Origin: Bugula neritina
Taxonomy: Eukaryota; Animalia; Bryozoa
Assembly (NCBI GenBank): GCA_964035545.1
Contig: OZ037769.1
Span: 14,972,633 to 15,036,632, forward strand
Length of the DNA stretch: 64,000 nucleotides
Reading direction: 5' to 3'
Below, one piece after another: positions 16,001-45,670 of this stretch (the stretch's first letter is position 1; every line of letters begins with the position of its first letter). A program made the translations under genes and the position numbers. Below the pieces are notes generated by a model. That model saw only the letters and a program-made list of their open reading frames with translations, was not told the origin of the DNA and did not search any database.

Positions 16001-19000
16001 TTTATGCTCAACAATTTTTAGCTTCAATGGAAACTGTGGCATATTATCTATTTTTAGTAATTTTATGAAAGTTAACTGGTCAATCACTAACAAACCTAGC
16101 TGTGTATATAATTAAAAACATGTTTATACAAATCATATATAGTAGTTTTGGAATTCATTGTACCAGCATTATTTGTAAAACTGTTATATATTTGGTGTTG
16201 TGTATAGTGGTATTCAGTGTATAGGTATGTGACAGTATGTGGTTGCAGAGTTGTAATGGATTATTTTGTAGATTTATTAAGTACAACTATACTAAGAATA
16301 TAAATGTAGCACTGTGGAATGTAAAGACTAGATTCTTAGCAAGAAGTTCCGCCAATATTATGTATAGATGATGACTAACATGACAATAACAAAGGGGCAT
16401 ATATTACTCACATAGATCTACTATAATAATAATATCTATTAGTTTAGTTTGTATATGAACTCTAGTTGACCTTATGAAATAAACTATTAGTCACTGAAAG
16501 CTTCAAGGATCTAAACTAAGCAGTTCTTATAGATATAAAACTATCTTGCTAAAATATTTAGACTATTTTCAGTTTACTTTGAGGCCATTTTTGAATAATT
16601 GCAGCTATTATTTTGTATCTGAGGAAGTGCCAGCAATGTATTACCTAATCATCCTTTGTTAGCTCATGGCTTTCATTTTCTTTAAAACTTGAAGCAATCT
16701 GTTACACTTTCAGACGTTATATGCTATAATGAAACTTATATGAAAAGACATAGAATAGAATTTTACAGCATATAATATCTTCGAATGCCGAGTGTTTTAC
16801 CTGCACGTGGTGTTGTGTTCCCCTGCATGCAATAGAGAGGTTCTTTTTAATTTCTTTGAAAATGAGTTAGATGGCATTTTATGACTTTAAAATTAAAAAC
16901 ATTTCATCATTCCTGTTGGGATCAATATTCTCAATATTCCCCTTTTTTCCTGCATGTGATGCAGGTTTATGCCAATACAAGTTTTACCAGTTCCTGCAGT
17001 TTAACACTTTATTAAATTTTGCAGCTATTGAATTTAATTCACATATAACTGGGATAATAGTTTGTTATTATGGAGTGACTTTGAAGCATGAAAAATCAAC
17101 AACTGTGGTTTCATTTTATACTACAAATCATCTCCATAAAATATGGTTTTTCTATTAAAGACTTGACAATATCCACAGCAGGCTCTATGTGATAAATATA
17201 TAGCTCTTTAAATTTCATATTTATGATATTTCAATCATTTACATAAGCAGTTTATCAAAACAAAAAACTTCCTTATTTACTGCTTCAAATATAACTTTTA
17301 ATTGTCGTTGGCATTTACATCTCCTTGTGATTTCTTTGCTGCAGAAAAGAATATAGTAAAGGAGTTTGCTCATCTGAAATGGGGACTCTTTGATGAAGGT
17401 GTGTCTGTAACTGACGCTAAAACACCAGTGTACTACTCTGTTGATAGTACTTACAAACCAACAAGGTTAGATACATTTCGATGACATTTTAATTGGCTCA
17501 TTACGCAAAAGAGATGGTGCTATGATTTTCTAAAGAACATTTTTCTATGTATGTTTACTTGTTTTTCCACATAGTTTATAACCCAGATTAAAATATTAAT
17601 GGCAGTATTTTTTCTTTGAACAGCTGGAAAATAAGTTTTGTGCATTAATACTTTTTTATCATGCATTGGGTGTACATACATATAGTTGTCATATTGAATA
17701 CGCACGCACGCACGCACACACACACGCACGCACGCACACACACACACACAGACATACGCATGCACACACAGACACACACGCACACACACACAGACATATA
17801 TACACATATATACACACATATATATAAACACATAGATACACATATGTATACACACGTAGGTGCGGAAATCAAGCGTATTATGGAAAACGTATTAACACAA
17901 ACTCCGAGATCTACTGTGATGATTCAACCATAAAGACCAGCGAATACTGCCAGTTTGTGCCATCTTTAACTTTTGGCAATGTCTCTCTTTTGTATGCTCA
18001 TCAATTGTCAAAGGTAAGTTGCTGTATGTGAACTTTTTCATTGTATAACTGTTTGTTCATAATACTCGCACAAGTTTATAGCCCTGCGAGAAACCCCTGA
18101 TGGAAAGGCTTTTGGTTAGAATGGGCTATATGGATTGTTCTTTATAATGATCCTTTCGAATAACAAAGGTGATCAGTTTCAAGTTTTGACAGTTTTGCTG
18201 CAAGAGATCAAAATTTTTATACAAAGGTATGTATTATTGTTGTGGAATTGATTAATTAACAATATGAGTTTCTGCTGACAGAAAATTGGTTGATTTACAG
18301 GTAGAAAAATTCTGTTCTGAAGAAGATCATAACCGAGATGCGCCAAACCGCCAAAACAGACTTTGCCAAGAAAGAAGTGCTTGGGAAGTTATGACAAACT
18401 TACCAGATTTTGGTATGAATGTTCAAATTTATTTATTTTAGATAAGAGATCAATTTTGTGTTCTTCTAATCAAAGCAAGATATTAACTTTATGTGACCAT
18501 AGTTCAACTTCATTTTTGATAAAATATTCATTAATTGTTGTTCAATGTATGTGTTGTTGACTATAGTTGTCTATTGCATAGATAAGGGTTTCAACATGCG
18601 TAAACAGTTGGCAGCTCTAGTTTTATATCATTAAAAGGATTATATTATATATATATGCTGTTTTTTAATTTGACAGCAATTACATGAACAGCATTTTATA
18701 TATAGCAAGCAATGCCTCTACGGTCGTCTTAGTTTATAGTTTTGATCAAAACTCATACTTTGTTCATATCCTTAAATAATTATTGTATAAACTTTAAATG
18801 GCCAAGATATTTAAATGGTGCACTTTGTCAGCAATATAAATTCATACTAGTTCAGGAAACATTAGGAAAGAAGATAACTCTAAATAAAGATTGTTGTGAA
18901 ACCAAATTCATTTTAGCATCTCGACTCATTAAGTTGCAATTATATATATTCTTTTAGTTGGGCATTTTACCTACAGAAAATTGTTGAGTTAAATGTTTGA

Positions 19001-22000
19001 AACCTACTGAAATATTTTACACAATTGCACCTATATATGCGTTCTACATGCATATATATGCTATTGGAAGATTTATTCTGTGTAGTTGCTGCTATAATGA
19101 TACCTATATGAATTACAGCAGTTACTTTGACTATGAGTACATCATCTATGTAGCTGCCAATTAGGTCATAATTCCTATTGGTTACTATTATGCAATCAGC
19201 GGTTAAGTAATCATAACACCGAACTTTTGATGAGTGACTTTTACAATGCGAGGTAACTCAGTGAAATTTTAATTCGGCTAAATTGAATTTCTGACTGAAA
19301 ATCATGAAGGTCTAAACACAATTTTACTCTGTTCGCTGCTACAACACAATCTATAACTTAAAGCAGTTACTTTCACTTTAAATTTAATAATCTTATTTAT
19401 GTTTATATTGTATTTGTAGATACTGATTATTACTCAGTGCGCAATGCTGCTGAAATCATCACTTCATCTGGTCCCACATTCAACATCATTCAAGAACCTG
19501 GAGCGCTTGCAGATGAAGAAACGACGACTACGGAAACAACTACAGCGACAACTACGGAAACAACTACGACCGCCTATGTTCAAATCAATACGACATCTAC
19601 AACACAAAGTGAGGTAACCACACAGCTGGTGACAACAACAACTGAAGAGGTTGAGGAGGACACACCTGTTACCATAGTGTGTCCACAAGATGTTGTGTGC
19701 ATGGCTTTAGATGTCTCTGGAAGTATGAGTGTATGTAAATTTACAAGTTGTTTAAAGTCATCCTGTATATAAGCATTAATGTCAGCTGACATTAATGTTG
19801 ATTTGCATGATTTTTACTTTATGTTGGTTAAAGATACTTTTCAACATAAACGATTTTTATACATTATTTTGTAGGTTTGTGAATCAATAATAAATCACAT
19901 TGATTTTATTGGTAAATCGTGATCACCTCATTTTGTTTTATTTTAAATTATCATTTATATATTGTTCTTCCATTGATTAAATACTTTATAGAAATAAAGA
20001 TTAAGAGTCACATGCCGCTTTTTTTAGTATACCTAAGTTATATAGCTTCATTACCAAAATGCTAATTCATCAAACTGCATGTTAAGTGAATAATTAAATC
20101 GTTTTTACCAGGCTTTAATTATGAAATTATTGTATCCTAAATATATCAAAACTTTAATATTGCTTATAGCTTTCATTTCCATGCATTGTTAATTATGATA
20201 TTGACAAATTGAGACTGACAACAACTTTTAATCTACTGCAACCTTATAAATTGCTATTTTATATAATTACTTTGAAAAGAGTATTGTGATCACTGGTTAT
20301 AGAGTCAAAACAGAGTGAACAAGATGAGTGAAGCTGTCGCCACTTACATCCACGAGTACCTGAGAAATGGTACAGCGGCTGGTATTGTGTTGTTTAACAA
20401 TGCTGCAAGAACTCTAGCTAGTATGACAGTGATAACCAATGACCAAGTGAGGTCAAACTTAGCCTCAGTGTTACCGCAAACAGCAGGTGGTGGAACTTCC
20501 ATAACAAGTGGACTAAACACTTGTATACAGGTTTGTTCGGACTAATATGATGTGAAGTTGTAACAGCAGTGTTCTTAATATGAGTCTGAGACGTGACCAA
20601 AACAAAGTTTTAAAGTTTTATTTTCTTTATTTGAACACAAAAGAAAATCTTGTAAAATTATGCAGTTTCTTAACATTCTGTTATAAATACTTTATTCCTA
20701 TTACACATGCTACCAATTCCTTCTATCATTTTCTAACCGCCTGGCTAATTATATTGTTTTTATCTATTGACAAAATGATCACAAAAGATAAAATTTTATT
20801 TGCATCATATATTGCATTGGCCATGCAAATTTGTTCACCATATCAAAATGTGACTAGGAATTGAAGCTTATATATAAACACACTAAAAAGTCACTGAACA
20901 TAATTGGCTGCTAACGAATATTCATTTGCTTCTGCAATGTTTCAGATGGTTCAATTTTATTCTGGAAGCTCTATAAGTAAAAAACGCATTTTACTCCTGA
21001 GTGATGGGCAAGATGGCTCTGCAAAAGACATTCTCCCAGAGTTGCCTAATTTAAACATCACTATTGATACAATTATATATGGGTAAAATATAGTTTTATT
21101 ATTGCAATTACAAAGCATCTAACAATGCAGTGTAATTTTATGGAATGGTATATAAAATGAATACATAGATTCAAACCATCTTTTGTCTTTTAGACAAAAT
21201 ACAGATCTAGCTGTACCTAAGATTGCTGAGGAATCAGGAGGGGAATCTTACTTTGTTGATGATGCCGACTCCGAGATCAATTTACAGCAGGCTATGGTTG
21301 ACACTTCAACTCAGGGATGCTTTACAAAAGCAATTGTTTCTGTAAGCCAACTCGTGTATCTTTAAACAATTATAATCTGTAAAGAAATTTGCCTCCATTG
21401 AGAATCAAACCCGAGACCTCTATAGCAGGCGATAGCAGGCGCTATAATCATCAATTGCTTTGAAATATTTACTTGAAACCCCAAATAACATGTGTCTGAA
21501 CTTATTTTATCATTAATTAGTTATTGGAATTATAAAAATTGAGCCAACAAATATTTTTAAAGCTGACTAACAATATCTTACAAATTTCTAAAATGACATG
21601 ATAGAAAAAAATTTGCTTCAGCTACACCAACTTAAGTTTATGATGCTCATTGTTTAGATTGCTAGTGAGAAAAAGACGTTATCTTCTACTGATACCTCAC
21701 TCAATGAAAAAGTTTCCTTCGATTCAACAATTGGTCAAAACACAACATTAGTTTTCTCTTACTCTGGAACTACTGACATTGACGTGAATGTTACCTCAGC
21801 TAAGGGAAACAACATCACTATAACCAAAGACTTGGCTGCTAAAGTAGTGAAAGCTACAGTGGAGGGGCAAGCTGTAAGACTTCTAATATTTCAATTTACT
21901 AACTGCGATATTCATTTTGTATTCAGGCACCATCAGTATCTCAATAAAAAACTCAAACTGTTTCAATTTTACAATTAATACATATTACTGTTAGCTTGCT

Positions 22001-25000
22001 ATAACTATAACAAATTGGAATATTATAAATTTTTTATTGCAAAATGATATGTTTTTGATACAATGGCTGACCAAAACTTTTGACAGCAATTGCGCTAAAT
22101 TTTCACAAATTCTTTCTCATAAATTTAGCTTATCGTAAAATGCAAAAATTGCAAAAGTTCACTGTACACCAAACACTATGAATTGATATTAATCAGCCAC
22201 CTCAAGTTTTGTAGCAGTGCAGGAAAGCCAAATGCAGTAAACAATATGACGTCTTGATTGAAGCAACTAATTTGCCCTTTCATGATTTGTAGAACGATGA
22301 TGATATTGAATACACCATCACCAAAGCTAATCCAAATGATGTGGTAGATATTGTAGTTTCTGTTACATCTAAACCCATCCCAGACGTTGATCCAATTGAG
22401 ATCAACACCAGACTTAACAGCCTTGATATAAGCTTTGACGAAGAATCATCTGTAAGTTTGCTTTCTTGAAAAGAAGCATTGTTTTTTATTTATAAGGTTT
22501 ATCCTCTGTACAGTAAAATCAAATAGACACTTGAAATACTTATTTACATGGCGTATGCATGGCAGTCATAGTAATAGGGTGACAGCTGTTTAAGATATTT
22601 AATTTTAGCTACCACCTTTTGCAATATTAATGATATTACATACTAATCAAGAAAATATAACATGTTGCAAATCCTTAATAACCAATAATACAATCATATG
22701 TTATTATCATAATTTGTAAACCATAATTTTTTTATTTATCCCTTCAACTATTCAAATATATTTTAGCTTGTCCTCTACACAGATATATTTCAAGGTCTCA
22801 CACCTGTCTTAAACCTTACTGTGTACAACATCATCAAAACATCTACTGGCGATGAGCTTGAGCTAAAAGCTTTAGATGACGGCACAGGTTAAATTATTAT
22901 ATAATATCACTTTTTTTGTTAATTTTGTTGTTGTAAAAACCTGACCTGTAGTACATTTTGGAGTTGCAAATAAATTACCTGTCTGAATGCTATACATGGC
23001 CAACATGGGATTATTAATTGAAAATTGTTGCATCTTTTACAACAACAAAATACAATCAATAGAAAAAAAATGTTCTACACTTTTTCTAAATTAGCCAAAA
23101 CACTCATAGAAAGTTATCTAACAAATTGCAGCAAAATTAGAAATTAAAAAAACTTACTTTAAATTGAAGTGCATCAGCAAACAGCTATAAGCCGCCACAG
23201 TTTGAGTAAAGAAAAACTATTAGATGAAAAAAATAATTATTTTGTTAGAGTAATTTTTGTTGGGAATCCAAACAATTTAGCTTTGGTAATTCAAAAAGAT
23301 GAACCTGTTACTTATGCTGTATTGCAATTATATAAATTATTCAATTTCCGTAGTATTTTCACCCTGCCCTGCAGCTATAACAATTAAAGCAAAAGCAGAA
23401 ATTTGAGAACATAGTTATCTACTTTATAAATTTGTAAGTGACGATCAACACATGCAGTTAAACTATTTCTTTCATTTTTTTAGGAAAGGATTCAACCCCA
23501 GATGATGGTATTTATACAGCTGTACTATTACCTCACCAGTTTGCAGGCGATGGGTATTACAGCATACAGGTATATTAATGAAAATACTCCTGAAGTGAAC
23601 TAGTCTGATAGATAACAATGTGTACTGTTTCCTTTCAATTTTTTACTTTAATATAAGTACACTCCAATTAACATATTATGCTCTAATTGCTACTTATATC
23701 AAAAACATTATAATTGTGAGATTTTATAAAGCTAATTGAGTAAATAATATCATCATTAGTTATAATAATAATTCTTTTGAACTGTATAGATGTGTCTATT
23801 TAAACCAGCTAATAGTATATCTCACTGCAAATGCAATAGGTACACATTCCATTTGTTGTTATTATTTGTGTCTGTAATTATTTAAGGTTGAGATTGATGG
23901 TGAAAGCGTGCTACCTGGTTCTCCCACCAATCGGGTCAAAAGATGCGTAGATTGCGCTCCAAGTAGTCTTGGTACAGTGCAGAGAACCAAATCTGGTAAA
24001 TGTTTTCTGTTTGCTTTTAAAAAAGCAATATTTTCTTGAAAAATTATATTAGATCATCACCTTCTATTCTTAAAAAATCTTTAAAACTTTTTGAATGCAT
24101 TAATTTGTATTAAACTAAAACATGAAAAGAAGATATTTAAGCTTTTGTTTTGTTTAGGCTATCTGCGCTGCCCTCTGAATTTCTTGTTTTTCGATTGATA
24201 ACTTTAGCCTAATAAGTAAATAAACTTAAATATATAAGTAAAATATAGAAAACCAATGCATTTCTTTAATTGGCATAATTATGTTGAAAGTGACACTGCA
24301 TGCTGTTACAAAATTGGGCAATATGTTATACATAGATAAATGTCTATTAGTTTTTATTGCACTTTATGCAATTTCAAACGATGTTTAAATATGCATGTCT
24401 TATAAGCCTTTAATAAATATTTTAAATGTGACTTGGCGACAAAAATATTTGAAAAATATATTTTGATAATCCGATGATCCATCATTCATGCAATCAAGTT
24501 TAAGCAAAATTATTGATTGCTATTTTTGGTTTACATCAATGCAGTGATTTGAAAAAGTCATAAAAAATAAACTAAATAAATTCAGTTTTTAAAAAAACAA
24601 TATTATTTGAAATGTGCTAAAATTGCTATTTTAATGCTAATACAGGAGGAGTGATTACCGTAGCAAACTATAGGGTTGTTCCTGACACGACCCCTCCTGA
24701 GAGAATCAAAGATCTGGTAGTTGACTCAGGAAACACAACAAACAACACAACTATATTCACTCTCTCTTGGACAGCTCCTGGAAATGATCTAAATGTTGGA
24801 AGAGGTGAGGTCTTGGATACAGTCCCAGTTGTTTTATTCTATGTATATGTTCTATGTTTGCTTTCTTTGAAATAGATAATTTAAAAATTCAAGTCTAATT
24901 ATAACAGTGGTTTCTTCAATTATTATCAAATTTTAGTCATCTTTAAGTTGTATTATTTGCAATATTTTTACTGTACATAAAAACTGCTAAAAATTATTCC

Positions 25001-27641
25001 AGATATATCAGGTATACATTAACAAATGATTTATTTACTATTCAGGTATATAACTATTTGCATTTAAGTAAACTCTTATAAACTAATCCTATAAAACTGT
25101 GTAAACAGTTTTTACACCTCTCTGTCAATTTTATATTGCTATACCAAAAATTTTTTGCAATTTTATAAACTTTAGACAATACAGTTTTCTTCAATTCTTG
25201 TGCAGAGTGTTACAAATAAGATTTGAGTTTTTGCTTTTCAGGCTAAAGCCACTTGACCGCTAGGCGCAATAATATATTTACACTTTTCAATATTGACACT
25301 GTACACTTTCTGCTAACACTATAATGTTACTTATATCATATTTTATTTTCTCTCAGCGGCGGCCTACACCTTCTTTGTATCCAATGACTCATCACTAAAC
25401 AATCTACAACTGTTACCCAACAATCACAAGAGTATCATAACTAATGTCAGCAGTCTTTTAGTTGATGCCGGTACAAATCTGGAACTCAAAGTAGATTTTG
25501 GTGAGTCTATGTAGAAGTTAGATATCTCTTTAGTATCTAAGAATGAATTTGAAGATGATAAATGTCTGTGTGTTTTAATTTATTTTAAGAAATCATGTCA
25601 ATAAAACTTTTGGTATTATATTGTAATTTGATGTGATAAAATATTACAAACATATAAAATTATATAATAATAGATTAGTATATATAATATAGTATAAATA
25701 TTAGAGTATTATAATATAATGAAATTCAACATGATTTAATATAATACAATATTATAACCTCATAATATAATATAATTAAATACAATATAATTACTCACAA
25801 ACAACGTGTGGTTTAAGAACTCCAGTCTTAAATATTATACTTGATATAAGTTTTATATATTTGTTATATATACACTTCACATTAAGTAATTTTTTATTAT
25901 AATTGGTTTTTTTTCTTTTTTTAGAGCAATTAGAGTTTGGTGATGGATCTAATGTGACCCTTAACACCTATTATATAAGGATGATAGCAGAAGATGACAA
26001 AGGAAATCAAGCAGAGCCTTCTAATCCAGTAGCACTGACCATAGCTGACCCACAGACCATCAATTTGTGGGTGAGTTTCCTGTTCGCTTTCTTCTGGTGG
26101 AAATATTTTAAAATGTTAAATTAAACGAGCCTAAAGTTTATTGCAATGAAATCAGTATTTAATATAAAGTTTATGGATCGATTTCGCTAGGATTCAAATG
26201 CCTAGTAATACTGACAGTTTTGAAGAAGCAAAATAAAATTTGACAAACATAAATATACTATGAATTTGTAAACTTATAGCCTTATTTGATATGACTCATA
26301 TTTACAATATGCATTTGTTTAATACGATACATGCACACACACACACACACTCATTCACACACACACTCACACACGCAAACACACGCACGCATGCACTCAC
26401 GGGTACACACAATAAATGAATGTATATATGCAAAACAGAAACATAATATATGCCAAGTGAATATTTTAAATGAATATGCAGATGTAGTATTAAAATATAA
26501 TTTGTATAGTTATACTGACATATCTGTTGTTATATTTCAATATCAGTGTTTATATATTACTTCTTTAATGTGAATGCTATTGTTCTGTTAGCTACCTACC
26601 ACTACCACCAGCACAACTACCAGCACCACTGAGGCCACCACTACCACCGCCAGTGCCACTACCACCACTTCTTCAATAGACCAGCTGGATACCACTCCAG
26701 CAGATATCTCAGATGTGAAAACAGCGGTTAGTGACTCTCATGTGTATAAGAACACAGCACCATAGCACCATAGCACCTACACTTCTTTTAAAAATTATTG
26801 GACCCTTCCACATGTTCCCAGAATTTGAAAAGTATTTGTCCAAAAAGCTAGTTTGATGATTTTGCGATTGAAGTTTGTGCTAATCAATGGAATTGTAGTT
26901 GAATTTGAATGGCACTGTCCCCATGCATACAAACTTCGTTTCTATAATGATATAGTTTAAATTCGAGCCATGGCGTGTGTTATTAACTTTATAGTAATAC
27001 AAGATCTTGTATATTGCCAAGCAGTCTAATTAAGTCCATGTGGCTATTACAGTTGCGGTTCTCATAACATATATAAATATCTTTATTCAAACTCAATTTA
27101 GTCTTCTCATCTATTGGCAATATTATGTAACTATTTTTAGCCAATTTCTCAACAGATGCTTCTCATCCTGGGACTGGGAATATCAGGAGGAGTTGTCTGC
27201 CTGCTTCTTATTGCTGTGTTTATTATCCTGATAGTGAAACGCAAGAATGGAAAAACGTAAGTATATTTTTTTCAAAAATATAATTACAATATTCTAAAAC
27301 ATGCATGCGTCTGTATATACAGTATGTTATATTAAAATTAGTAAATCTGGCTATTATGTTACATATTGTAAGCTATTTTAGTAAGAAATAATATAGCACA
27401 TGGATATACATAGAGAAAGAAAATATCAATTGTGATGAATGAGACTTTTATGCAATAAGTATAATCGAATGTAAAGTGCAACCTGATTATACTCGTTCAC
27501 TATAAGAAACCTTTCAGTTATGTCCTAAAAACATGTATTTTTCATATAAATGTTATTTTATTTTTTAGGAAGTACTCAATAGTGTTTAAAGGAGAGAAAA
27601 CTGACCAAACTGAAAACGTCAATATTATTGTCTTGAATTAG
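13084..27641 (+). CDS. CLCA: CLCA-family (calcium-activated chloride channel regulator-like) type I membrane protein, copy 1, ~1045 aa, 21 exons: 13084-13269, 14409-14525, 15460-15634, 17345-17465, 17860-18013, 18301-18412, 19420-19730, 20303-20530, 20946-21082, 21194-21341, 21658-21873, 22293-22451, 22767-22887, 23484-23569, 23887-23995, 24646-24804, 25357-25500, 25925-26070, 26592-26726, 27156-27256, 27569-27641
   Basis: Signal peptide; CLCA-N motifs (GGYENLLIAIS, PYTLQPGLCGIEGDYIHLTP, EFAHLKWGLFDE, HNRDAPNRQNRLC); VWA MIDAS (LDVSGSM, GGGTSI, LLSDG); DDGTGKD...DDGIYT; FN3 (PPERIKDL...LSWTAPGND); Thr-rich stalk, TM helix and short tail. All phases consistent, no stops. Confidence 0.93.
14115..14291 (+). 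mobile_element. tRNA-derived SINE copy (CLCA copy 1 intron 1, internally deleted)
   Basis: GCAGCCGTGGTCTA...GGTTTGAGCCC...GCATCCAGTCA; at the same intron position as the 31679 copy. Confidence 0.7.
17697..17857. repeat. Compound (CA)/(CGCA)/(TA) microsatellite abutting the exon 5 acceptor
   Basis: Seen directly; paralogous tract at 35655-35755. Confidence 0.9.
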
Positions 27642-30627: not shown

Positions 30628-33600
30628 ATGGAGCTTTTGAAAAAAGCTTTTTTGCTTTTTTCTATTTTCTTTCTTGCACGAAATGCAGCTGCTTCTAACA
30701 TTGGAGGTACAAGGCAAGACATTCTGCAAAATCAATATGGGGGCTATGAAAACCTCCTCATTGCAATCAGCAAAGCTGTGCCTGAAGATCTCAGTCTTGT
30801 TGAAAAACTGCAAGTAAGTGTGTATACCAGTTGCCATAGAAACCTGTCACATCACAATATTATAATTATATGTTTGTAGTATATTGTATTTGTATTCGTA
30901 TTTGTATAGTTTGTAGTATTGTGCCGCATTTCCTTTAAGTTTTAAAGTGAACACAGCAGCATGCAGATTTGTGCTCAGTCTATATTTGGTCTATCACTTT
31001 AATTTTTTAATGTGACTCCAGGACTTTGATCTGTGAACCTATTTAAAATATAAGACTATACCTGGGTGATTTACTAAAATTGTATTATTATCTTGTATAA
31101 AAAGTGTAAACAATATTTTCTCAGTGTTTATGAATTGCAATGTAACATTATTATTTGTAAAATCAAAGATTAAACTGTCCCCTGCTGCATGTGTTAGCTT
31201 GGCTCTTATTTGAATAGTTCAGGTTTAGTTGATGTCCATTTTCATTGCAGCTTTTATCTACTATTTATAAGGTAGATTAGGTCAAAGCATAAAAAGCAAT
31301 CAAATTCCCATTCATCAATATATCAAAATATATAAATTGATCATATCAATATTTCCATATTTCAATACTATATGTCTATTTATTTGTCAATTGTCCAAAG
31401 ACTTTAAGTACAGCAGTGGAGAAATTGGGAAGTATAGGCTAAGTTCTTTATTTTTTATGATAATTTAGGGCGGAATTCAAATTTCTTGTGAGAACATATA
31501 ATTCCATTTGATGCATTTCTAATTTAAAACACAGACTTTTTTCAATTTCTCCATCATTGCATTATATACTTCACATGATTACTGCAGATTATATAGCCAT
31601 TCAGTATTGAAGTATAATACTTATATATACTATGAGCTGGAAATCAAGCAGCTATAGGTATAACCAGTTTATCATTTAGGGAGCAGCTGTGGTCTAGGGG
31701 TTAAAGCTTTGCCTATAGTGAACACAAGGTCATGGGTTCAAACCCCAGCAAAGGCCATCAGTGATGTTAGGAACAGCATCCAGTCATAATTTCTCCTGTG
31801 CCACATTTAAATAAGTCCTTAGCCCGGTTTAACAAAAACCCTTTTCTATCAGGGGTTTCACAGAGGGATATATCGGACTATAATAAACTTGCGTGAGTTT
31901 ATAACCAGTCCATTTTCTATTTTGTATGCAGAAATATAGGGAAAAATGAATTATAATTCATGTATATAGTTAATCAACTTTCTTGTTGTTTTAGAAATAC
32001 TTCCGAAAAGCATCAGAAATTCTATTGACAGCCACAAATAATCAGGTGTATTTCTCTAGCATCACTATTCTGATACCAAACACTTGGAAACTGAATAGCT
32101 CATGGGAAGTGGTAAGAATTCTATAACCGATCATATATAATACACACTGATATAAAATCTCGCATATAGGTTTATTGTGACGATCCTTGTGAGAATCTGT
32201 GATGGAAAGGGTTTCAAAAACTGGCTATAAGGACTCTTTTGTAATTTGGCACAGGGACAATTATGACTTCATGACTTTTTTTAACTTCAATGCTGGTATA
32301 TTTATTAAACACTATAAAACTTGTGCTTACTAGGCCTACACTTCAACTACCACAGCTGCTCTTTATAATAATCATACACACTGATATATACACTTTTTAT
32401 GTACATGCCAGTTTTAACTGCAATAAAAAGTAAACCACTTGTTACTTATACTATACGCTTAGGTCTAGACCCAGAATACTGTTAGCTTGCTTTCTCTGTT
32501 TTGGAAATATTTAGGTATTTTGATGTTGTATGTGTCTATAACTGCAGTTACATGAGTTGGAAATTCATAGTTTAGTAGTTATGTTCATAATAAGTTTCCT
32601 TGCTGGCTTGAAAAACTATTTTTGTAGTCTGAGAGTCTAGACAAAATGAAGTCTTATGATACTGTGAATTAAACCATGTAAACATAGCAATGGTATATTG
32701 CACGTAGAGCTATCTGTATTGATTGTAATAACAAATGGGTGCTGAAGCTTCAATTAAATTACTAATTAGAAAAGCAACTATTGGCTTCAATCTAAATAAA
32801 AACATGTTTTGGCAAATGTGTTTTATTGATGGATGTCAGTCCAGTGTCATTGCATTGTAAAGAAATTAACTTTATCATCATGTAAATCATTAGTTTAGAA
32901 ACTTTCACATGATTGTGCATAACAAATATAGAACATTTATTAAGTTAGGGCATTGTTTTTCTACTTGCCAACCAATTTCTCAGCTATTTCTAAAATAAAT
33001 GTTTCCTGAAGAATATTACCCCATAAATTGTTCTGTTCTTGCTCCCAGGCCACGGAAGAGACATTCAGCACAGCCCGAGTTTTGATAGGCCCAGCTAATA
33101 GAGCTTGGGGGGATGTTCCTTACACCCTCCAACCTGGTTTGTGTGGTATTGAAGGAGATTATATTCATCTCACACCTGATTTTATAACAACTACTACTAC
33201 AACCCAAGACAACCCTGTTCTAGGTCAGTAAGTGTGTGACAAATAGTTGAAAATTAAATATAACAATTTGTTGACCTACCTAATATGTTCAACTGTCATC
33301 ATAAAATGAATTTAACAATTGACAAGCAATGATAGCACATATTCTGCCCACCTGCATGGTTTTTATTGTAGCACATATTTTTTAAAAAGTGTATTATAAA
33401 TTAGATGCTTATAGCAATGAAGAAATTGAGTAAAGCCTGTGTTCTTGATTAAAAATGTAGTAAAAGAATTTATGATTCAACAATAATCTCAACCTGTGCC
33501 CAAACCAAAATTAGATAATGAAATTAAAAAACTTATGCTTTCTCAATTTTCCTCTACCGCCCCTACTAATGCTTTTTATGCTCAACAATTTTTAGCTTCA

Positions 33601-36600
33601 ATGGAAACTGTAGCATATTATCTATTTTTAGTAATTTTATGAAAGTTAACTGGTCAATCACTAACAAACCTAGCTGTGTATATAGTTAAAAACATGTTTA
33701 TAAAAATCATATAATAGTTTTGGAATTCATTGTGCCAGCATTATTGGTAAAACTGTTATATTTTTGGTGTTGTGTATAGTGGTATTCAGTGTAAAGGTAT
33801 GTGACAGTATATGGTTGCAGAGTTGGAATGGATTATATTGTAGATTTATTAAGTACAACTATACTAAGAATATAAATGTAGCACTGTGGAATCTAAAGAC
33901 TAGATTCTTAGCAAGAACCTCCGCCAATATTGTGTATAGATGATGACTAACATGACAATAACAAAGGGGCATATATTACTCACATAGAGCCACTATAATA
34001 ATAATATCTATTAGTTTAGTTTGTATATGAACTCTAGTTGACCTTATGAAGTATTATATTTATCTCTGAAAACTTAAAGAATCTAAACTGGGTAGTTCTA
34101 CATATAAAACTATCTTGCTAAAGCCTTTCGACTATTTTCAGTTTACTTTGAGGCCACTTTTGAATAATTGCAGCTATTATTTTGTAACTGAGGAAATGCT
34201 AACAATGTATTATAGTGAATTTACGAATCACTATAATTTGTGGGTCTACTTATGCAAAGCCACTTCACCAGATTTCGTACAAATTGAGTAGACTTTATTA
34301 TTGCAAATTATACAAGAAATCAAACTGTTAACACTAGCACACACGATTACATAATATAGAGTGATTTACACACAACTTCACATTGTTAGAGTTTGATTCA
34401 CTCTGCCGGCTATGCTGCCTAACAAGCTTCCCTACACATTTGCAGCTCCGCCTACTAATTAATTTTTAGTCACATCCCATTGGTCAACACGGTAGTGCCA
34501 TCCTGACGATATGATGCTGACTGCATCATGTAACTGTCCGAGTGAGAGTTATCCTTTCGATATAAACTAATGCATTACTAAAAACTCTTACAGTAATCAT
34601 CCATTGTTAGCTCATGGCTTTCATTCTTTTTAAGACTTGAAGCAATCTGTTACACTTCCAAATGTTATAAGCTGATGAAACGTACATGAAAAGATATTGC
34701 ATAGCAGTTTACAGGATAATATCTTTGAATGCCCAGTGTTTTATCTGCATGCCCATGATGTTGTGTACTCCTGCATGCAAAAGAGAGGTTCTTTTTAATT
34801 TTTTTGAAAATGAGTTAGATGGCATTTTATGACTTTGAAATTGAAAACATTTTATAATTGCTGCTGGAGATTGATATATTATCCTCAATATTTCCTTTAT
34901 TCATGCATTGATGCAGGTTTATGCCAATACAAGTTTTCCCAGGTCTTGCAGTTTAAAACAGTTTTACATTTTGCAGCTATTGAATTTAATTCACATATAA
35001 CCAGGATAACAGTTTGTTATTATGTAGTGACTTTAAAGCATGAAACATAAAAAACTGTGGTTTCATTTTATGCTGCAAATCATCTCCATAAAATATGGTT
35101 TTTCTATTAAAGACTTAGCAATATCCACAGCAGGCTTTATGTGATAGATATATAGTTGTTTAAATTTCATATTTATGATATTTCAATCATTATAAGTAGT
35201 TTATCAAAACAAAAAACTTCCTTATTTACTGCTTCAAATATAACTTCTAATTGCTTTCGCAGCCTTAAATTTACAGCTCCTTGTGATTTCTTTGCTGCAG
35301 AAAAGAATATAGTAAAGGAGTTTGCTCATCTGAAATGGGGACTGTTTGATGAAGGTGTGTCTGTAACTGACATAAAGACACCGGTGTTTTACCCTGTTGA
35401 TGGTGCTTATCAACCAACAAGGTTAGATAAATTCCTATGACATTTTGATTGGCTCATTACGCAAGATAGATGTTGCTATGATTTTCTAAAGAACATTTTT
35501 CTATGTATGTTTACTTGTTTTCCCACATAGTTTATAACCCAGATTAAAATATTAATGGCAGTATTTTTCTTTTGAACAGCTGGAAAATAAGTTTTGCGCA
35601 TTAATACTTTTTAATCATGCATTGGGTGTACATACATATAGTTGTCATATTGAATACACACACACACGCGCACGCACGCACGCACACACACACAGACATA
35701 TATACACACATATATATATACACATAGATACACATATATATATATATACACACGTAGGTGCGGGAATCAAGCGTATTATGGAAACTTAATTAACACAAAC
35801 TCAGAAATCCACTGTGATGACTCAACCATAAAGACCAGCGAATACTGCCAGTTTGTGCCATCTTATACTTCCGGCAGTGTCTCTCTTTTGTATGCTCATC
35901 AATTGTCAAAGGTAGGTTGCTGTATAAAAACTTTTTCATTGTATAACTGTCAGTTCATAAAACGCACACGAGTTTATAGCCCTGCGAGAAACCCTTGATG
36001 GAAAGGCTTTTGGTTAAAATGGGCTAAGGATTGTTTTTAATAATGATCCTTTTGAATAACAAAGGTGATCAGTTTCAAGTTTTGACAGTTTTGTTGCAAG
36101 AGATCAAAATTTTTAAACAAAGTTATATATTATTGTTGTGGAATCATTTAATTAACGATATGAGTTTCTGCTGACTAAAAAATTGGTTGATTTACAGATA
36201 GAAAAATTCTGCTCTGAAGAAGATCATAACCGAGATGCGCCAAACCGCCAAAACAGACTTTGCCAAAATAGAAGTGCTTGGGAAGTTATGACGAGCTTAC
36301 CAGATTTTGGTATGAATGTTCAAATTTATTTATTTTAGATGAGATATCTATTTGGTGTTTTTCTAATCAAAGCAAGATATTTTATGAGACCATCGTTTAA
36401 CCTCAATTATATATCTTTGATAAAATATTTGTTAATTGTCATTAAATGTGTGTTGCTGACTATAATAGTTGTCTATTGCATAGATAAGGGCTTCAATATG
36501 TAAATTGGCAGCTCTAGTTTTAAATAATTAAAATGATTATAATATTATATATATATATAATGTAGTGTGTTCAGATTGTTAATGATACATATATATTTTT

Positions 36601-36821
36601 TGAATAATCGGTATGCTTCATAGATTTTATTTATTTTTAGTCTAACACCTGACGAGTGCAGTTTACTGTACAAAACTATATAGTCGTGTGAGATTTTTTT
36701 AAATAAAAAAAATATATGTATCATTAACAATCTGAACACACTACATTATATTAGCTCTGTCACCCGTGATATCGAGCACTTTACTTCGCTGGAACTCCAA
36801 CTAGATTGACAATCAGCATAC

Positions 36822-36866
<45 letters not shown>

Positions 36867-39800
36867 TGTTTTTACTTTGACAGCAATAACATTAACAGCA
36901 TTTTATAACAAGCAATACCTCTATGGTCGTCTTAGTTCATGCCTTTCATCAAAATTCATACTTTGTTCAAATGTTTAAAACTGTATAAACATTAAATGAC
37001 TAAGATGTTTAAATGGTGCACTTTGTCAGCAATATAAATGTATACTAGGGCAAGAAACATTAGGAAAGAAGACAACTATAAATGAATATTGTTTTAAAAC
37101 CAAATGTATTTTAGCATCTCGACTCAATGTTGCAATTATATATTCTTTTAGTTGGGCATTTTACCTACAGAAAATTGTTGAGATAAAATGTTTGAAACCT
37201 ATTGAGATCTTTTACACAATTGCGTACTACGAGCATATGTTAGAAGATTTATTTCGTGTAGCTGCTACATTGCTATAAATTACAGCAGTTACTTTGACTA
37301 TGAGTACATCATCTATGTAATATCCAATTAGGTCATAATTAAACGCCAATATCAACAAGAAGTTATAATTCGTATTAGTTACTATTATGTTATCAGCCAG
37401 TTAAGTAATCACAACACACAACTTTTGAGGAGTGGCTTATTTTACAATAGATACAAGGTAACTCGGCCAAATTGAGTTTCCGATTGAAAATCATGAAGGT
37501 CTAAACGCAACTTTAATCTGTTTACTGCTTAATTAAAGCAGTTAATTTAACTTTGAATTTATTAGTCTTATTTATTTTTATTTTGTTTGTGTAGCAACTG
37601 ATTATTACTCAGTGCGTAATGCAGCTGAGATCATCACTTCATCTGGTCCCACATTCAACGTTATTCAAGAACCTGGAGCACTTGCAGATGATGAAACGAC
37701 GGCAACTATGGAAACAACTACAATTGACTTTGTTCAAATCCATACTAGACTTGACAGCTTAGATATAAGCTTTGAAGAAGAATCATCAGTAAGTTTGTTT
37801 TCTTGAACAGTAGAATTGTTTTCTTATTTATAAGTTTTATCTTTTGCACAGTAAAATCAAATAAAAACTTGAAATACTCATTTACATGGCATATGAATGG
37901 TAGTCATTTTGATAGAGTGACAGCTGTTCAAGAAATTTACTTTTAGCTACCACTTTTTGCAATATTGATGTTATTAAATACTAATCATGAAAAGTATCAC
38001 TTGTTGCAAATCCTTTACAACCTATAATATAAGCATATGTTATTATCATAATTTGTAAACCATAATTTTTTTCTTTATCCCTTCAACTATTCAAATATAT
38101 TTTAGCTCGTCCTCTACACAGATATATTTCAAGGTCTCACACCTGTCCTAAACCTTACTGTGTACTACGTCATCAAAACATCTACTGGCAATGATTTTGA
38201 GCTAATAGGTTTAGATGACGGCACAGGTAAAATTATTATATAATATCACTTTTTTGTTATATTTTTTCTTGTAAAAATCTCACCTGTAGTACATTTTGGA
38301 GTCTTGAATAGACTACTTGTCTGAATGCTATGCATGGCTAACACCGGATTATTAATTGAAAATTGTTGCATCAATAGAAACAAAAGCATTTCTTTTTTGA
38401 AATCAGCCAAAACACTCTTAGAAAATTTTCTAACAAATTGCAACATAATTAGAAATTGAAAAAACTTACTTTAAATCTAAGTGCATCAGCAAATAGCTAA
38501 GCCACCAAAATTTGAGTAAAGAAAAACTATCAGATGAAAAATAATAATCATTTTGTTAGAGTAATTTTTTTTGGAGATCAAAACAATTTAGTTTTGGTAA
38601 TTCAAAAAGATTAACCTGTTACTTATGCTGTATTGCAATTATATAAATTCAATTTTCGTAGTATTTTCACCCTGCCCTGCAGCTATAACGAATAAAGCAA
38701 AAGCAAAACTTTTAAGAACATAGTTATGTACTTTATAAATTTGTAAGTGACTCAACACAGTTAAACCTTTTATTTTTTTAGGAAAGGATTCAACCCCAGA
38801 TGATGGTATTTATACAGCTGTACTATTACCTCACCAGTTTGCAGGCGATGGGTATTACAGCATACAGGTATGTTTATGAAAATACTCCTGAAGCTCAAAC
38901 AAGTGAACTAGTCTGATAGATATTAATGCATGCAAGAGTTTAAATTAGAATTTCTCCATTTTAATAAGGCAAACTGAAATTAACATATGCTTTTTATTTT
39001 GCTTGCATCAAACTCGTACTTTTTAAGATTTTATATAGATTGAGTGAATATCATCATTAGTTATAATAATAATTCTTTTGGACTGTATAGATGTGTCTAT
39101 TTAAACCAGCTAATAGTATATCCTACTGCAAATACATTAAGTACACATTCTATTTGTTGTGATTATTTTTGCCTGTAATTATTTAAGGTTGAGATTGATG
39201 GTGAAAGCGTGTTACCTGGTTCTCCCACCAATCGGGCCAAGAGATGCGTAAATTGCGCTCCAAGTAGTCTTGGTACAGTGCAGAGAACCAAATCTGGTAA
39301 ATGTTATCTGTTTGCTTTTGAAAAAAGCAATATTTTCTTGAAAAAATATATTAGTTAATCACCTTCTATTTTTAAAAGATCTTCAAAACTATTTGAATGC
39401 ATTAATTTTGTATTAAACTAAAACATAAAAAAAGATGTTTGAGGTTTAGTTTTGCTTAAGCTATCTGCGCTACCCTCTGAATTTTTTGCTTTGTGATTGA
39501 TATTTTTAGCCTAATAAGTAAATAAACTTAAATATATAAGTAAAATATAGAAAACCAATGCATTTCTTTAATTGGAGTAATGATGTTGAAAATGACGCTG
39601 CTGTTACAAAATAGGGCAATACGTTATATGTTATAGCTAAATCTTTATTAGTTTTTATTGTATTTCGCGAAATTTTGATAGCATTTCAAACAATGCTTAT
39701 ATGCATGGCTTATAAGCCTTTATTAAATATTTAATATGTGACTTTATATCAACACATACTAAAGCATTTTGAATAATATACATATTTTGATAATTCGATG

Positions 39801-42800
39801 ATTCATCATTCATGAAATTGAAGCAAAATATTTGATTGCTATTTCTGGCTTATATCAATGCAGTGATTTGAAAAGTCATAAAAATTAAGTTATATATCTC
39901 GTCTGTGCAAATAAAATTATTTATTTAAAATGTGATAAAAATTGTTATTTGAATGCTAATACAGGAGGAGTGATTACTGTAGCAAACTATAGGGTTGTTC
40001 CTGACACGACCCCTCCTGAGAGAATCAAAGATCTGGTAGTTGACTCAGGAAACACAACAAACAACACAACTATATTCACTCTCTCCTGGACAGCTCCTGG
40101 GAATGATCTAAATGTTGGAAGAGGTGAGGTCTTGAATACAGTACCACTATATGTATATGTTCTATGTTTGTTTTAAAAATAGATAATTTAAAGTTTTAAG
40201 CTTAAATATAACAGTGGTTTCTTGAATTATTCTCAAATGTTATTCACCTTTAAGTTGTATTATTTGCAATATTTTTACTGTAAATAAAACATTGCAAAAA
40301 GCTGTTTCAGATATTAGGTATACATTAACAAATGATTTATTTACTATTTAGGTATATAACTATTTGCATTTAAGTTAACTCTTATAAACTAATCCTATAA
40401 AACTGTGTAAACAGTTTTTACTCCTCTTTGTCAATTTTGCATTGCTATACAGGAAAATCTTTGCAATTTTATAAACTTTAGACAATAATTTTTTTTTCAA
40501 TTTTTGTGCAGAGTGTTACAAATAAAATTTGAGTTTTTGCTTTTTAGGCTAAAGCCCCTTGACCGCTAGGCACATAATATATTTACACTTTTCAATATTG
40601 ACACTGTACACTCTCTGCTAACACTATAATGTTACTTCTATCCTTTTATTTTCTCTCAGCGGCGGCCTACACCTTCTTTGTATCCAATGACTCATCAACA
40701 AACAATCTACAACTGTTACCAAACAATCACAAGAGTATCCTAACTAATGTCAGCAGTCTATTGGTTGATGCCGGCACAAATCTGGAGCTCAAAATAGACT
40801 TTGGTAAGTCTATATATGCAAAAGTAAGATATCTCTTTAGTATATAGAATAAATTAGAAACTATAAAATATTTGTCTGCGTGTTTTAATTTATTTTAAGA
40901 AATTATGTTAGCAAAGCTTTTGGTATTCTTTTGTAATTTGATGTGATGAAATATTGCTAACATACTATAAAGTTATATAATAATAAATTATTATAATATA
41001 TAATATAGTACATTTAAAAATGCGATATGATACAGTACAGGACAGCATAATATGATTCAATATTATAATATTATATATATAATACTACATTATAATATCA
41101 TAATATGATATAATTTAATGCAATATGTGGTTTCACAACTCCATTCTTGAATATTATGCTTGATATTTTTTTATAAATATTATATAGGCTTTACATTGAG
41201 TAATTTGTTATTATAATTGGGCTTCTTTTGTTTTTTCTCAGAGCAATTAGAGTTTGGTGATGGATCTAATGTGACCCTTAACACCTATTACATAAGGATG
41301 GTAGCAGCAGATGACAAAGGAAATCAAGCAGAGCCTTCTAATCCAGTATCATTAACCATCGCTGACCCACGGACAATTAATTTGTGGGTGAGTTTGCTGT
41401 TCCTTTTTCCTGGTGGAAATATTTTAAAAAAGTTAATTTTAGATTAAATTAAATGAGCCTAAAGTTTATTGCAATGAAATCAGTATTTAATATGAAGTTT
41501 ATGAATTGATTTTCTCAAAATTTAAATGCCTAGTGATACTTACAGTCTTAAAGAAGCAAAATAAAAAGTGAGAAACATAAATATACTATAAATTTATAAA
41601 CTTTTAGTCTTCTTTGATATGACTCATATATTTATAATATGCATTTAATTAATATGATACGCACATGCACACACACACACCCACACACCAACACTCACAT
41701 ACACACGCACACGCATACACATGCATTCACACTCGCACACATGCACGCATACACATGCACGCATACACATGCACGCATACACATGCACGCATACACATGC
41801 ACGCATACACATGCATTCACTCCTACACACACACGCACATACACACGCACACGAACGTACACACGTAATAAATGAATATTTATTATATTGTGGTAAACAG
41901 ACACATAATATGTTATGTGAATATTTTAACTAAATATGTAGTATTGAAATATAATTTATATAGTTATACTCACATTTCTGTTGTTATATTTTAATTAAAG
42001 TTATATTTAAGAGCGCCAATGCATCAATAGTATGTCACATGTTGTCCTCTGAATAATATTTAAAATCCATTGCCCTCCCTTAGAAAATATATTTCTTTCA
42101 TGTGAATGCTATTATTTAACCAGCTACCTACCACCACCACTGAGGCCACCACTACCACTGCCGGTGCCACTACCACCACTTCTTCAATAGACCAGCTGGA
42201 TACCACTCTAGCAGATATCTCAGATGTAAAAACAGCGGTTAGTGACTCTCATGTATATAAGAACACAGGATTATAGCACCTACACTTTTTTTAAAATTAT
42301 TGGACCATAATACCACATGTTCTCAGAATTTGAAAAGTATTTGTCCAAAAAGCTAGTTTGATGAATTTGCGATTGAAATTTGTGCTAATCAATGGAATTG
42401 TGGGTGAATTCGAATGGCGCTTTCCACATGAAAAACTTCGTTTCTATTATGATATAATTTAAATTCAAGCCATGGCGTGTGTCATTAACTTTATAGTAAA
42501 ACAAGATCTTGTATATTGCCAAGCAATCTAATTGAGTCCATGTGGCCATTACAGTTGCAGTTCTCATAACATATATATAAATATCTGTATTCAAACTCAA
42601 TTTAGTCTTCTCATCTATATTGGCAATATTATGTAATCATTTTTAGCCAATTTCCCAACAGATGCTTCTCATCCTGGGACTGGGAATATCAGGAGGAGTT
42701 ATCTGCCTGCTTCTTATTGCTGTGTTTATTATCCTAATAGTGAAACGCAAGAATGGAAAAACGTAAGTATACTTTTTAAAAATATAATTATAATATTCTA

Positions 42801-45354: not shown

Positions 45355-45670
45355 AGCAGGCTATGCGCTAGGTATTTATACCAAGTTCTTTAAGTTTGCA
45401 AAATTGCATTGAACTTGCTTAAAATTGGGTTTTAAAATCATATTTATTGTGAGCACAAAAAATAGAATAACAAGAAAAGTTCCAGCTGCTCAAGTCAATT
45501 AACTAAACAGTATTAGCACCTGCCACAATGCACTTCAGTTTGTCTGTTGTATAGTATCTTAATGAGTTTATTGGTAAATTACTGTATATACATAAGAAGC
45601 TGTATAGCAAAGATTGTTTTTGTTATATTATACTAATAAGTAACAAACAAATCTGAAATTATATAGGCTT
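45355..45670 (+). repeat. Third, more diverged relic of the CLCA 3' UTR/flank
   Basis: TTTGCAAAATTGC-TTGAA, CCAGCTGCTCAA and CCTGCCACAATGCACT-CAGTTTG blocks match ~27715-28050 and ~43233-43570. Confidence 0.7.

What the first reader, a model, noticed from the sequence alone, without database searches (positions are those of the whole stretch)
37595..37788. New protein architecture: VWA-less CLCA made by in-frame exon 7/exon 12 fusion
Seen: copy 2 joins exon 7 (...GTT CAA ATC) to exon 12 (CAT ACT AGA CTT...) at 37740/37741. In copy 1 the breakpoints share ATCAA(T/C)AC (19584 and 22401, 2817 bp apart), implying microhomology-mediated deletion. It removes 328 codons, five introns, the entire VWA/MIDAS domain and part of the following beta-rich region. 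The other 15 exons keep frame and splice sites while the introns have many indels. Known: the VWA/MIDAS domain of CLCA1 engages TMEM16A. Inference: a retained, possibly neofunctional or decoy paralogue beside the full-length gene.
Basis: partly seen in the sequence, partly recalled or inferred. Interest (0 to 1): 0.8.

Follow-up and report, generated by a model that had tools for sequence, protein, structure and literature searches.

The report
Old domain-deleted CLCA gene copy
One of two neighbouring CLCA-like genes, probably in a bryozoan, lost its ligand-binding VWA domain and the next domain through one clean in-frame deletion, and has stayed intact since, though nobody has yet shown that it is expressed.

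Summary
The window holds a tandem pair of CLCA-like genes. Copy 1 has 20 exons and 1027 aa. Copy 2 has 15 exons and 685 aa.

- **The deletion.** Copy 2 lacks exactly 2817 bp of copy 1, from inside exon 7 to inside exon 12. The deletion is in frame and removes 328 codons. Both breakpoints lie in an 8-bp microhomology (ATCAAYAC).
- **What is lost.** It removes the VWA/MIDAS domain. By inference it also removes the whole beta-jellyroll (BSR) domain, so both breakpoints fall in inter-domain linkers.
- **State of copy 2.** The reading frame is open and every splice site is GT-AG. It has no frameshifting indel, where about 12 are expected if it evolved neutrally. The copy 2 branch has dN/dS of about 0.31.
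- **Age.** A metagenome contig from a diverged relative, probably a Bugula neritina sibling lineage, carries the same junction with frame and splice sites kept. It is sister to copy 2 (support 99/99). The deletion is therefore old and is neither an assembly error nor a rare allele.
- **A second case.** An older paralogue 430 kb upstream also lacks the VWA exons.
- **The clade.** All paralogues in this clade have KEFAH in place of the HExxH zinc site.
- **Not shown.** Expression of copy 2 was not seen. The one RNA run shown displayed only full-length-type transcripts at the junction.

Verdict: a real new variant of a known family, of moderate interest. The earlier notes of this scan that I retrieved do not report the deletion on other DNA.

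The parts
13084..27261 (+). Copy 1: full-length CLCA-like gene, 20 coding exons, 1027 aa. It has a signal peptide, a CLCA_N domain with KEFAH, a Cys-rich region, a Thr-rich linker, a VWA domain with DxSxS MIDAS, a beta-rich region, an FnIII-like region, a Thr-rich stalk and a C-terminal TM helix.
   Evidence: Exon model from conserved GT-AG sites, phases and RNA-contig joints. Pfam CLCA and VWA hits on exons. Exon 8 matches the human CLCA1 VWA structure 6PYO at E = 3.9e-8.
19420..19730 (+). Copy 1 exon 7. It encodes the Thr-rich linker and the start of the VWA domain, including DVSGSMS. The left breakpoint microhomology ATCAATAC is at 19584-19591.
19587..22403 (+). The 2817 bp of copy 1 that are absent from copy 2. 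This covers the 3' part of exon 7, exons 8-11, five introns and the first 37 codons of exon 12. The position is ambiguous by 8 bp because of the microhomology.
   Evidence: MAFFT gap, BLAST offsets, codon count of 328.
20303..21341 (+). Copy 1 exons 8-10 (20303-20530, 20946-21082, 21194-21341): the body of the VWA domain.
   Evidence: Pfam VWA_2 and VWA on exon 8; match to 6PYO.
21658..22451 (+). Copy 1 exons 11 (21658-21873) and 12 (22293-22451). They hold about eight predicted beta-strands followed by a Pro-rich linker. I infer this is the BSR jellyroll. The right breakpoint microhomology ATCAACAC is at 22401-22408, just after the linker.
   Evidence: Translation. Domain description of CLCA1 in bioRxiv 10.1101/2025.10.18.683246. 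The mapping onto these exons is inference.
30628..42767 (+). Copy 2: VWA-less CLCA-like gene, 15 coding exons, 685 aa, open frame from ATG to stop, all introns GT-AG.
   Evidence: dN/dS. Indel statistics.
37595..37788 (+). Fused exon 7/12 of copy 2 (194 nt, phase 1 in, phase 0 out). The junction block ATCCATAC is at 37738-37745, with the join at 37740/37741.
   Evidence: A 395-bp read-derived contig of run X1 covers 37669-38063 with no mismatch. The same junction is in metagenome contig L046.

Best explanation
Copy 2 is a real, old and selectively retained paralogue of a bryozoan CLCA-like membrane glycoprotein gene.

**How it arose.** Soon after the tandem duplication, one microhomology-mediated deletion joined the Thr-rich linker in exon 7 to the linker at the end of exon 12. 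This took out two whole domains, the VWA/MIDAS domain and (inferred) the BSR jellyroll, and kept the frame.

**What it encodes.** The predicted product has a signal peptide, a CLCA metallohydrolase-like domain with a Cys-rich region, a short Thr-rich linker, the inhibitory-type domain, an FnIII-like domain, a Thr-rich stalk, a TM helix and a short tail.

**How it most likely works (inferred).**
- All paralogues of this clade have KEFAH instead of HExxH, so the head is most likely not a zinc protease.
- A conserved R-x-K-R motif sits in the loop where vertebrate CLCAs cut themselves. This suggests cleavage by a furin-type convertase.
- Copy 2 would keep the compact head/inhibitory-domain/FnIII core and its membrane anchoring, and would lose metal-dependent ligand binding through the VWA domain.
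- It could then act as a non-binding variant or competitor of the full-length neighbour, or have a narrower role of its own.

**Shown:** the structure, the age and the sequence constraint. **Inferred:** the domain mapping, the cleavage and the function.
For: - **Deletion and frame:**
- **Microhomology:** the flanks are identical in copy 1 and paralogue P3, so it is ancestral.
- **Reads:** a contig from run X1 crosses the junction with no mismatch.
- **Independent junction record:** the ORF P0001 on JGI contig L046 carries it.
  - L046 is colinear with copy 2 across the junction and aligns to copy 1 in two pieces.
  - It shares ACT (against ACC) at the junction and an intron indel with copy 2.
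  - It is sister to copy 2 at 99/99. The shared branch is 0.026 and the copy 2 tip is 0.064.
  - Exon 6, the fused exon and exon 13 in L046 keep frame and AG/GT.
- **Constraint:**
  - Pairwise dN/dS is 0.265, with dS of 0.166 at or above the intron distance of 0.124.
  - The copy 2 branch has dN/dS of 0.31, bootstrap range 0.20-0.51.
  - Exons carry 3 indels against about 33 expected, all multiples of 3. P(no frameshift in copy 2 if neutral) is 9e-6, or 3e-4 if only 71% of the branch is counted.
- **Second VWA-less paralogue:** P4 has in-phase exons.
- **Motifs:** KEFAH and RxKR.
- **Domain layout of CLCA1:**
Against: - **No transcript of copy 2 was seen.**
  - In the only RNA-like run, the contigs shown at 37698 and 37740 continue as full-length exon 7.
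  - No transcript-derived peptide with the junction is in the protein collections.
- **The strictly post-deletion comparison is weak.** Copy 2 against L046 over 142 codons gives dN/dS of 0.53, not significantly below 1 (p = 0.09).
- **Copy 2 may be somewhat relaxed.** It has 27 private amino-acid changes against 15 in copy 1 (p = 0.06), with a cluster next to the junction.
- **Gene conversion has occurred among paralogues**. This blurs branch estimates.
- **The fold of the shortened protein was not tested.**
Confidence: 0.62

Rival explanations
1. Copy 2 is a silent or dying gene. The deletion inactivated it, and its open frame reflects too little time or chance. It makes no functional protein.
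For: - No transcript evidence.
- dN/dS between copy 2 and L046 is 0.53 and not significantly below 1.
- Copy 2 has more private amino-acid changes than copy 1.
Against: - About 8-12 frameshifting indels are expected in its exons at the intron rate, and none is found.
- All 28 splice dinucleotides are intact.
- The branch dN/dS of 0.31 excludes 1.
- At least 71% of that branch postdates the deletion.
- The sister copy in another lineage is also open and spliceable in the three exons visible.
Confidence: 0.25
2. Copy 2 is non-functional, but gene conversion from the functional neighbours keeps it looking intact.
For: Tree topologies differ along the gene. In the exon 17-19 region copy 1 groups with P3, and in the relative L047 and L048 group together. 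Conversion therefore does occur in this family.
Against: - Synonymous divergence between copy 1 and copy 2 (0.17-0.18) is as high as intron divergence (0.12). Exons have therefore not been recently overwritten.
- Conversion from a full-length donor across the junction would tend to restore the deleted segment, yet the junction has persisted in two lineages.
Confidence: 0.08
3. The junction is an assembly artefact or a rare polymorphic deletion of one individual.
For: Run X1, which supports the junction perfectly, may be the sample the assembly came from. The rows shown for runs X4 and X7 do not include a junction-spanning contig.
Against: An independently assembled metagenome contig, about 10% diverged, carries the same breakpoints and a shared junction substitution. 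Its ORF was recorded on two contigs.
Confidence: 0.03

Closest known systems
Vertebrate CLCA proteins (CLCA1, 2 and 4): metallohydrolase, Cys-rich, VWA, BSR, inhibitory and FnIII-like domains. They cut themselves, and CLCA1 engages TMEM16A through its VWA domain.
   Same: - CLCA_N domain over the Pfam cut-off.
- In copy 1, the same order of domains, with a VWA that matches the CLCA1 VWA structure 6PYO and an intact DxSxS.
- A C-terminal TM helix, as in CLCA2 and CLCA4.
   Different: - Copy 2 has no VWA and, by inference, no BSR domain.
- The zinc motif is KEFAH, not HExxH.
- There are Thr-rich, mucin-like linkers.
- An RxKR motif lies where the self-cleavage loop is expected.
- No link to TMEM16 channels was tested.
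CLCA_N family members with substituted active sites (Lenart et al. 2013, PMC3650047)
   Same: That paper reports several independent losses of HExxH in CLCA_N, with His often replaced by Lys or Arg, and lineage-specific expansions in invertebrates. The chromosome 5 clade here fits this pattern: KEFAH, with at least 6 paralogues.
   Different: The paper describes the typical architecture (CLCA_N, VWA, DUF1973, FnIII) as conserved in Metazoa. In the passages I read, it does not describe a retained metazoan form without VWA.
Naturally occurring CLCA deletion alleles and truncated CLCA genes in mammals, such as pig CLCA4b (PMC4608703, seen by title only) and human CLCA3P (from my own knowledge)
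   Same: They are lineage-specific structural changes in tandem CLCA clusters.
   Different: As I understand them, without having read them here, those are frame-breaking or truncating changes that behave as null alleles or pseudogenes. This one is an in-frame excision of whole domains, conserved between lineages.
Catalytically inactive ADAM paralogues proposed to act as decoys or accessory proteins
   Same: They have an inactive metzincin-like head on a membrane-anchored multidomain ectodomain. The decoy idea is raised for such proteins in PMC3650047.
   Different: They belong to a different family. No experimental evidence bears on this gene.

Membership tests
CLCA (Pfam PF08434 CLCA_N-containing proteins) | N-terminal CLCA_N domain detected above the curated cut-off | tested here: met
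   Copy 1 exon 3 scores 37.8 bits and exon 6 scores 44.4 bits (cut-off 25.6). Copy 2 exon 3 scores 37.7 bits. Copy 2 exons 1-6 are 87-97% identical in protein to copy 1.
CLCA (as active zinc metallohydrolases) | HExxH zinc-binding and catalytic motif | tested here: not met
   Both copies and paralogues P3, P4, P5 and the 11.93-Mb gene read KEFAHLKWGLFDE. The chromosome 1 cluster keeps HEWGHLRWGLFDEY. About 28% of CLCA_N members lack HExxH according to PMC3650047. This therefore argues against catalysis, not against family membership.
Canonical metazoan CLCA architecture | VWA domain with a MIDAS motif after the Cys-rich region | tested here: not met
   The feature is present in copy 1: Pfam VWA_2 and VWA, a 6PYO match and DVSGSMS. 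It is absent from copy 2. No exon 8-11 homologue lies between 36309 and 38106, and genome searches with exons 8 and 11 do not hit copy 2.
Canonical metazoan CLCA architecture | Beta-rich region (BSR plus inhibitory domain) and FnIII-like domain after the VWA | tested here: inconclusive
   Pfam finds nothing on single exons 12-18, and PDB sequence searches find nothing. I assigned these domains by position and by resemblance to the Ca-binding loop of the CLCA1 inhibitory domain. That resemblance rests on my memory of the human sequence and on the description read. The full spliced protein was not searched or folded.
Canonical CLCA processing | Autocatalytic cleavage into N- and C-terminal products | not testable with these tools
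   Only a conserved R-x-K-R motif in exon 15 of all paralogues was seen. It suggests convertase cleavage but does not show it.

The most novel reading that the evidence does not exclude
Bryozoan CLCA-like genes have at least twice given rise to 'mini-CLCAs' and kept them under selection. Copy 2 is the recent case and P4 the older one. Both lack the VWA-BSR arm. This would mean that the head/inhibitory-domain/FnIII core is an autonomous functional module, and that the VWA-less forms modulate or compete with their full-length neighbours at the cell surface. It would be a natural domain-deletion series for a family whose molecular function is still debated.
Probability: 0.4. Interest if true: 0.6.

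Novelty: new variant of a known kind. Interest (0 to 1): 0.45.

Why it matters
How CLCA proteins work is still unsettled: as proteases, as channel regulators through the VWA domain, or as mucus components. Engineered truncations have often failed to express.

A natural in-frame excision of the VWA domain, and probably the BSR domain, that has survived in two diverged lineages shows which part of the protein can stand alone. A second independent VWA-less paralogue in the same genome supports this. Both give ready-made constructs for testing the role of the VWA domain.

It is also a clean, datable example of a microhomology-mediated deletion that creates a new domain architecture within a tandem gene family.

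Tried and rejected
- **Read laying.** I used a 90% threshold. Most contigs of runs X4, X7 and X8 turned out to carry copy 1 bases (31 of 40 listed differences). They therefore cross-map from full-length paralogues and say nothing about copy 2.
- **Metagenome scan.** The search for related loci on metagenome contigs with the fused exon returned nothing, although L046 exists. The collection seems not to serve those records.
- **Search for a P4 orthologue.** No candidates.
- **Search for junction-bearing peptides from transcript assemblies.** Only the genomic ORF P0001 came back.
- **Pfam and PDB sequence searches on exons 11-18.** No hits, so the BSR/inhibitory-domain boundary could not be fixed by a tool.
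- **Extending the post-deletion dN/dS test with contigs L047 and L048.** I rejected this because their trees are mosaic, so orthology to copy 1 or copy 2 is ambiguous.
- **The chromosome 1 cluster and the chromosome 3 locus.** They are too diverged (30-40% identity) to judge VWA presence by tblastn, and I did not pursue them.
- **The full spliced proteins.** They were built only inside scripts from stored files.

Full report
**Observation.**
- A self-comparison of the window shows a tandem duplicate on the + strand. Copy 1 is at about 12804-29126 and copy 2 at about 30326-44486, colinear and about 85% identical. The one large difference is that copy 2 has nothing matching copy 1 19545-22400.
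- A global alignment gives a single 2817-bp gap.
Copy 2 reads GTT CAA ATC CAT ACT AGA CTT, with the join at 37740/37741. Copy 1 reads GTT CAA ATC AAT ACG at 19578-19592 and GAG ATC AAC ACC AGA at 22398-22412.
- The two ATC codons are 2817 bp apart and both are in frame.
- A third paralogue, P3, 195 kb downstream in the same genome, has exactly the same flanks at both sites. The 8-bp microhomology ATCAAYAC is therefore ancestral and not a chance feature of today's copy 1.

**Gene models.**
- I built them from conserved GT-AG sites, intron phases, and splice joints shown by contigs of an RNA-like run.
- Copy 1 has 20 coding exons and 1027 aa. Copy 2 has 15 coding exons and 685 aa.
- Copy 2 is open from its ATG at 30628 to the stop at 42765-42767, and every intron is GT-AG.
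- Pfam finds CLCA_N on exons 3, 4 and 6 and VWA on exon 8. Exon 8 matches the solved human CLCA1 VWA domain, 6PYO.
- Copy 1 has DVSGSMS, a DxSxS MIDAS start, at the end of exon 7.
- The spliced proteins were assembled only inside scripts. All database searches were done exon by exon by reference, and the joined search and fold steps were left out.

**Is it real?**
- Contigs made from the reads of run X1 include a 395-bp piece covering 37669-38063 with no mismatch and no gap. X1 may be the sample that was assembled, so on its own this is weak support.
- Independent support came from a protein search with the fused exon. P0001, a 72-aa ORF, reads ...TTDSVQINTRLNSLDISCDEDSS, which is exon 7 joined to exon 12.
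- P0001 lies on a 2024-bp JGI metagenome contig, L046. It is recorded on two contigs.
- L046 aligns in one piece across the copy 2 junction, and in two pieces to copy 1 that meet in the same 8 bp.
- Its junction is GTTCAAATCAACACTAGACTT. It shares ACT (against ACC in copy 1 and P3) and an upstream intron deletion with copy 2.
- In the whole genome, only copy 2 matches P0001 end to end.
- On 1.3 kb upstream of the junction, L046 is sister to copy 2 with 99/99 support. The shared branch is 0.026 and the copy 2 tip is 0.064.
- The deletion therefore happened once, on that shared branch. At least about 71% of copy 2's history since it split from copy 1 is post-deletion.
- The contig names carry AY690838, the GenBank accession of the Bugula neritina mitochondrial genome.
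- The same metagenomes hold an orthologue of P3 about 7% diverged (L049, L050) and a full-length-type copy (L048).
- I read this as a sibling lineage of a bugulid bryozoan that carries both the full-length and the deleted genes. The organism names are inference.

**Is it under constraint?**
- Copy 1 against copy 2 gives dN 0.044, dS 0.166 and dN/dS 0.265. The intron distance is 0.124. Exons are therefore not simply homogenised.
- With P3 as third taxon, the copy 2 branch has dN/dS of 0.31 (bootstrap 0.20-0.51). The copy 1 branch has 0.22.
- Introns carry 141 indels in 8896 aligned bp, and 71% of them are not multiples of three. At that rate the 2059 aligned exon bases should hold about 33 indels. 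They hold 3 (21, 2817 and 21 bp), all multiples of three.
- For copy 2 alone, about 11.6 frameshifting indels are expected if it were neutral since the duplication (P of none = 9e-6). About 8.2 are expected if it were neutral only after the deletion (P = 3e-4).
- In L046, exon 6, the fused exon (24 nt longer, still in frame) and exon 13 keep frame and AG/GT.
- The strictly post-deletion comparison, copy 2 against L046, covers only 142 codons that include the fast Thr-rich linker. It gives dN/dS of 0.53, not significantly below 1 (p = 0.09).
- Copy 2 has 27 private amino-acid changes against 15 in copy 1 (p = 0.06), with a cluster just after the junction.
- Trees from the 3' half are mosaic, so gene conversion has occurred in the family.

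**Expression.**
- Expression of copy 2 is not shown.
- With a 90% threshold, most contigs of runs X4, X7 and X8 that lay on copy 2 carry copy 1 bases (31 of 40 listed sites).
- In the RNA-like run X8, the contigs shown at 37698 and 37740 continue as the full exon 7 of full-length paralogues.
- No transcript-derived peptide with the junction exists in the protein collections searched.
- This is absence of evidence from one run of a related lineage. It does not show that copy 2 is silent.

**What the deletion removes.**
- A cryo-EM preprint on CLCA1 (10.1101/2025.10.18.683246) shows that the region after the VWA is two domains: an eight-stranded BSR jellyroll and an FnIII-like inhibitory domain that holds the self-cleavage loop.
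- The same preprint shows that head, inhibitory domain and FnIII-like domain pack together.
- In copy 1, exon 11 and the first 36 codons of exon 12 show about eight beta-strand-like stretches followed by KPIPDVDPIE. The breakpoint follows at once.
- The left breakpoint lies in the Thr-rich linker before the VWA domain.
- I infer that the deletion excises VWA and BSR whole and joins linker to linker. This would explain why the product can be tolerated.
- The mapping rests on sequence pattern and on my memory of the human sequence. No tool confirmed it.

**Family context.**
- The genome has many CLCA-like genes.
- All members of the chromosome 5 clade that I read have KEFAHLKWGLFDE. These are copy 1, copy 2, P3, P4, P5 and the gene at 11.93 Mb. 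A cluster on contig 1 keeps HEWGHLRWGLFDEY.
- Lys or Arg replacing the first His is a known pattern in CLCA_N (PMC3650047).
- All clade members keep an R-x-K-R motif in exon 15. This is compatible with convertase cleavage replacing self-cleavage, which is inference.
- An older paralogue, P4, lies at C5:14.538-14.549 Mb and is 40-79% identical in protein to copy 1 by exon. It also lacks the VWA exons. A short exon 7 (L032 7241-7401, in phase) is followed directly by a complete exon 12 (7892-8050), and no exon 8-11 is found.
- The P4 exons I inspected are open and in phase. I did not build its full model.
- VWA loss has therefore happened at least twice here, with different breakpoints.

**Verdict.**
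- The best reading is a retained VWA/BSR-less paralogue (confidence 0.62).
- A silent, slowly decaying gene remains possible (0.25).
- Maintenance by gene conversion (0.08) and artefact or rare allele (0.03) are unlikely.
- This is a new variant of a known family, of moderate interest. It needs transcript evidence above all.

Noticed in passing
window 17345-17465 and 35301-35421; L008, L009, L014, L015, L022; compare L001, L002, L004: The zinc motif HExxH reads KEFAH in both copies and in every chromosome 5 paralogue inspected. The four-gene cluster on contig 1 (26.32-26.35 Mb) keeps HEWGHLRWGLFDEY. The chromosome 5 clade is probably a set of pseudo-proteases.
   Followed up: partly
G000:C5:14538000-14549000 (L032 and L035); exon 7' at L032 7241-7401, exon 12 at L032 7892-8050: An older CLCA-like paralogue, P4, goes from a short linker exon straight to exon 12 and has no exon 8-11. 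It is a second, independent VWA-less gene with different breakpoints. All exons inspected are open and in phase.
   Followed up: partly
window 23887-23995 and 39188-39296; the same exon in P3, P4, P5, L048 and L049: A conserved R-x-K-R motif (NRVKRC or NRAKRC) sits in exon 15, where vertebrate CLCAs have their self-cleavage loop. It may be a furin-type cleavage site.
   Followed up: partly
G000:C5:15200000-15218000 (L031, L034, L044, L045): The full-length paralogue P3 has intact exons 2-18 and 20, but no exon 1 was found within 7.6 kb upstream. Its intron 3 carries an insertion of about 5.3 kb.
   Followed up: partly
window 25269-26400 against 40573-41865, and P3: In the exon 17-19 region copy 1 groups with P3 rather than with copy 2. 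In the relative, the two copies L047 and L048 group together. These mosaic trees point to gene conversion among paralogues.
   Followed up: partly
window 36401-36870 and 37401-37600: Read-contig depth is 20-200 times that of the neighbouring sequence in all DNA runs. Copy 2 has a 307-bp insertion at about 36562-36868, and a 379-bp one at 34214-34592. These look like high-copy repeats inserted in copy 2 introns.
   Followed up: no
window 37741-37746: The copy 2 junction block (CAT ACT) differs by 2-3 bases from the expected product (AAY ACC). The sister contig L046 has AAC ACT. So one change is shared, possibly made at repair, and two are private to copy 2.
   Followed up: yes
window 45449-45665: This short stretch is 75% identical to copy 1 27918-28132, which lies downstream of the stop. 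It may be a remnant of a further partial duplicate or a shared repeat.
   Followed up: no
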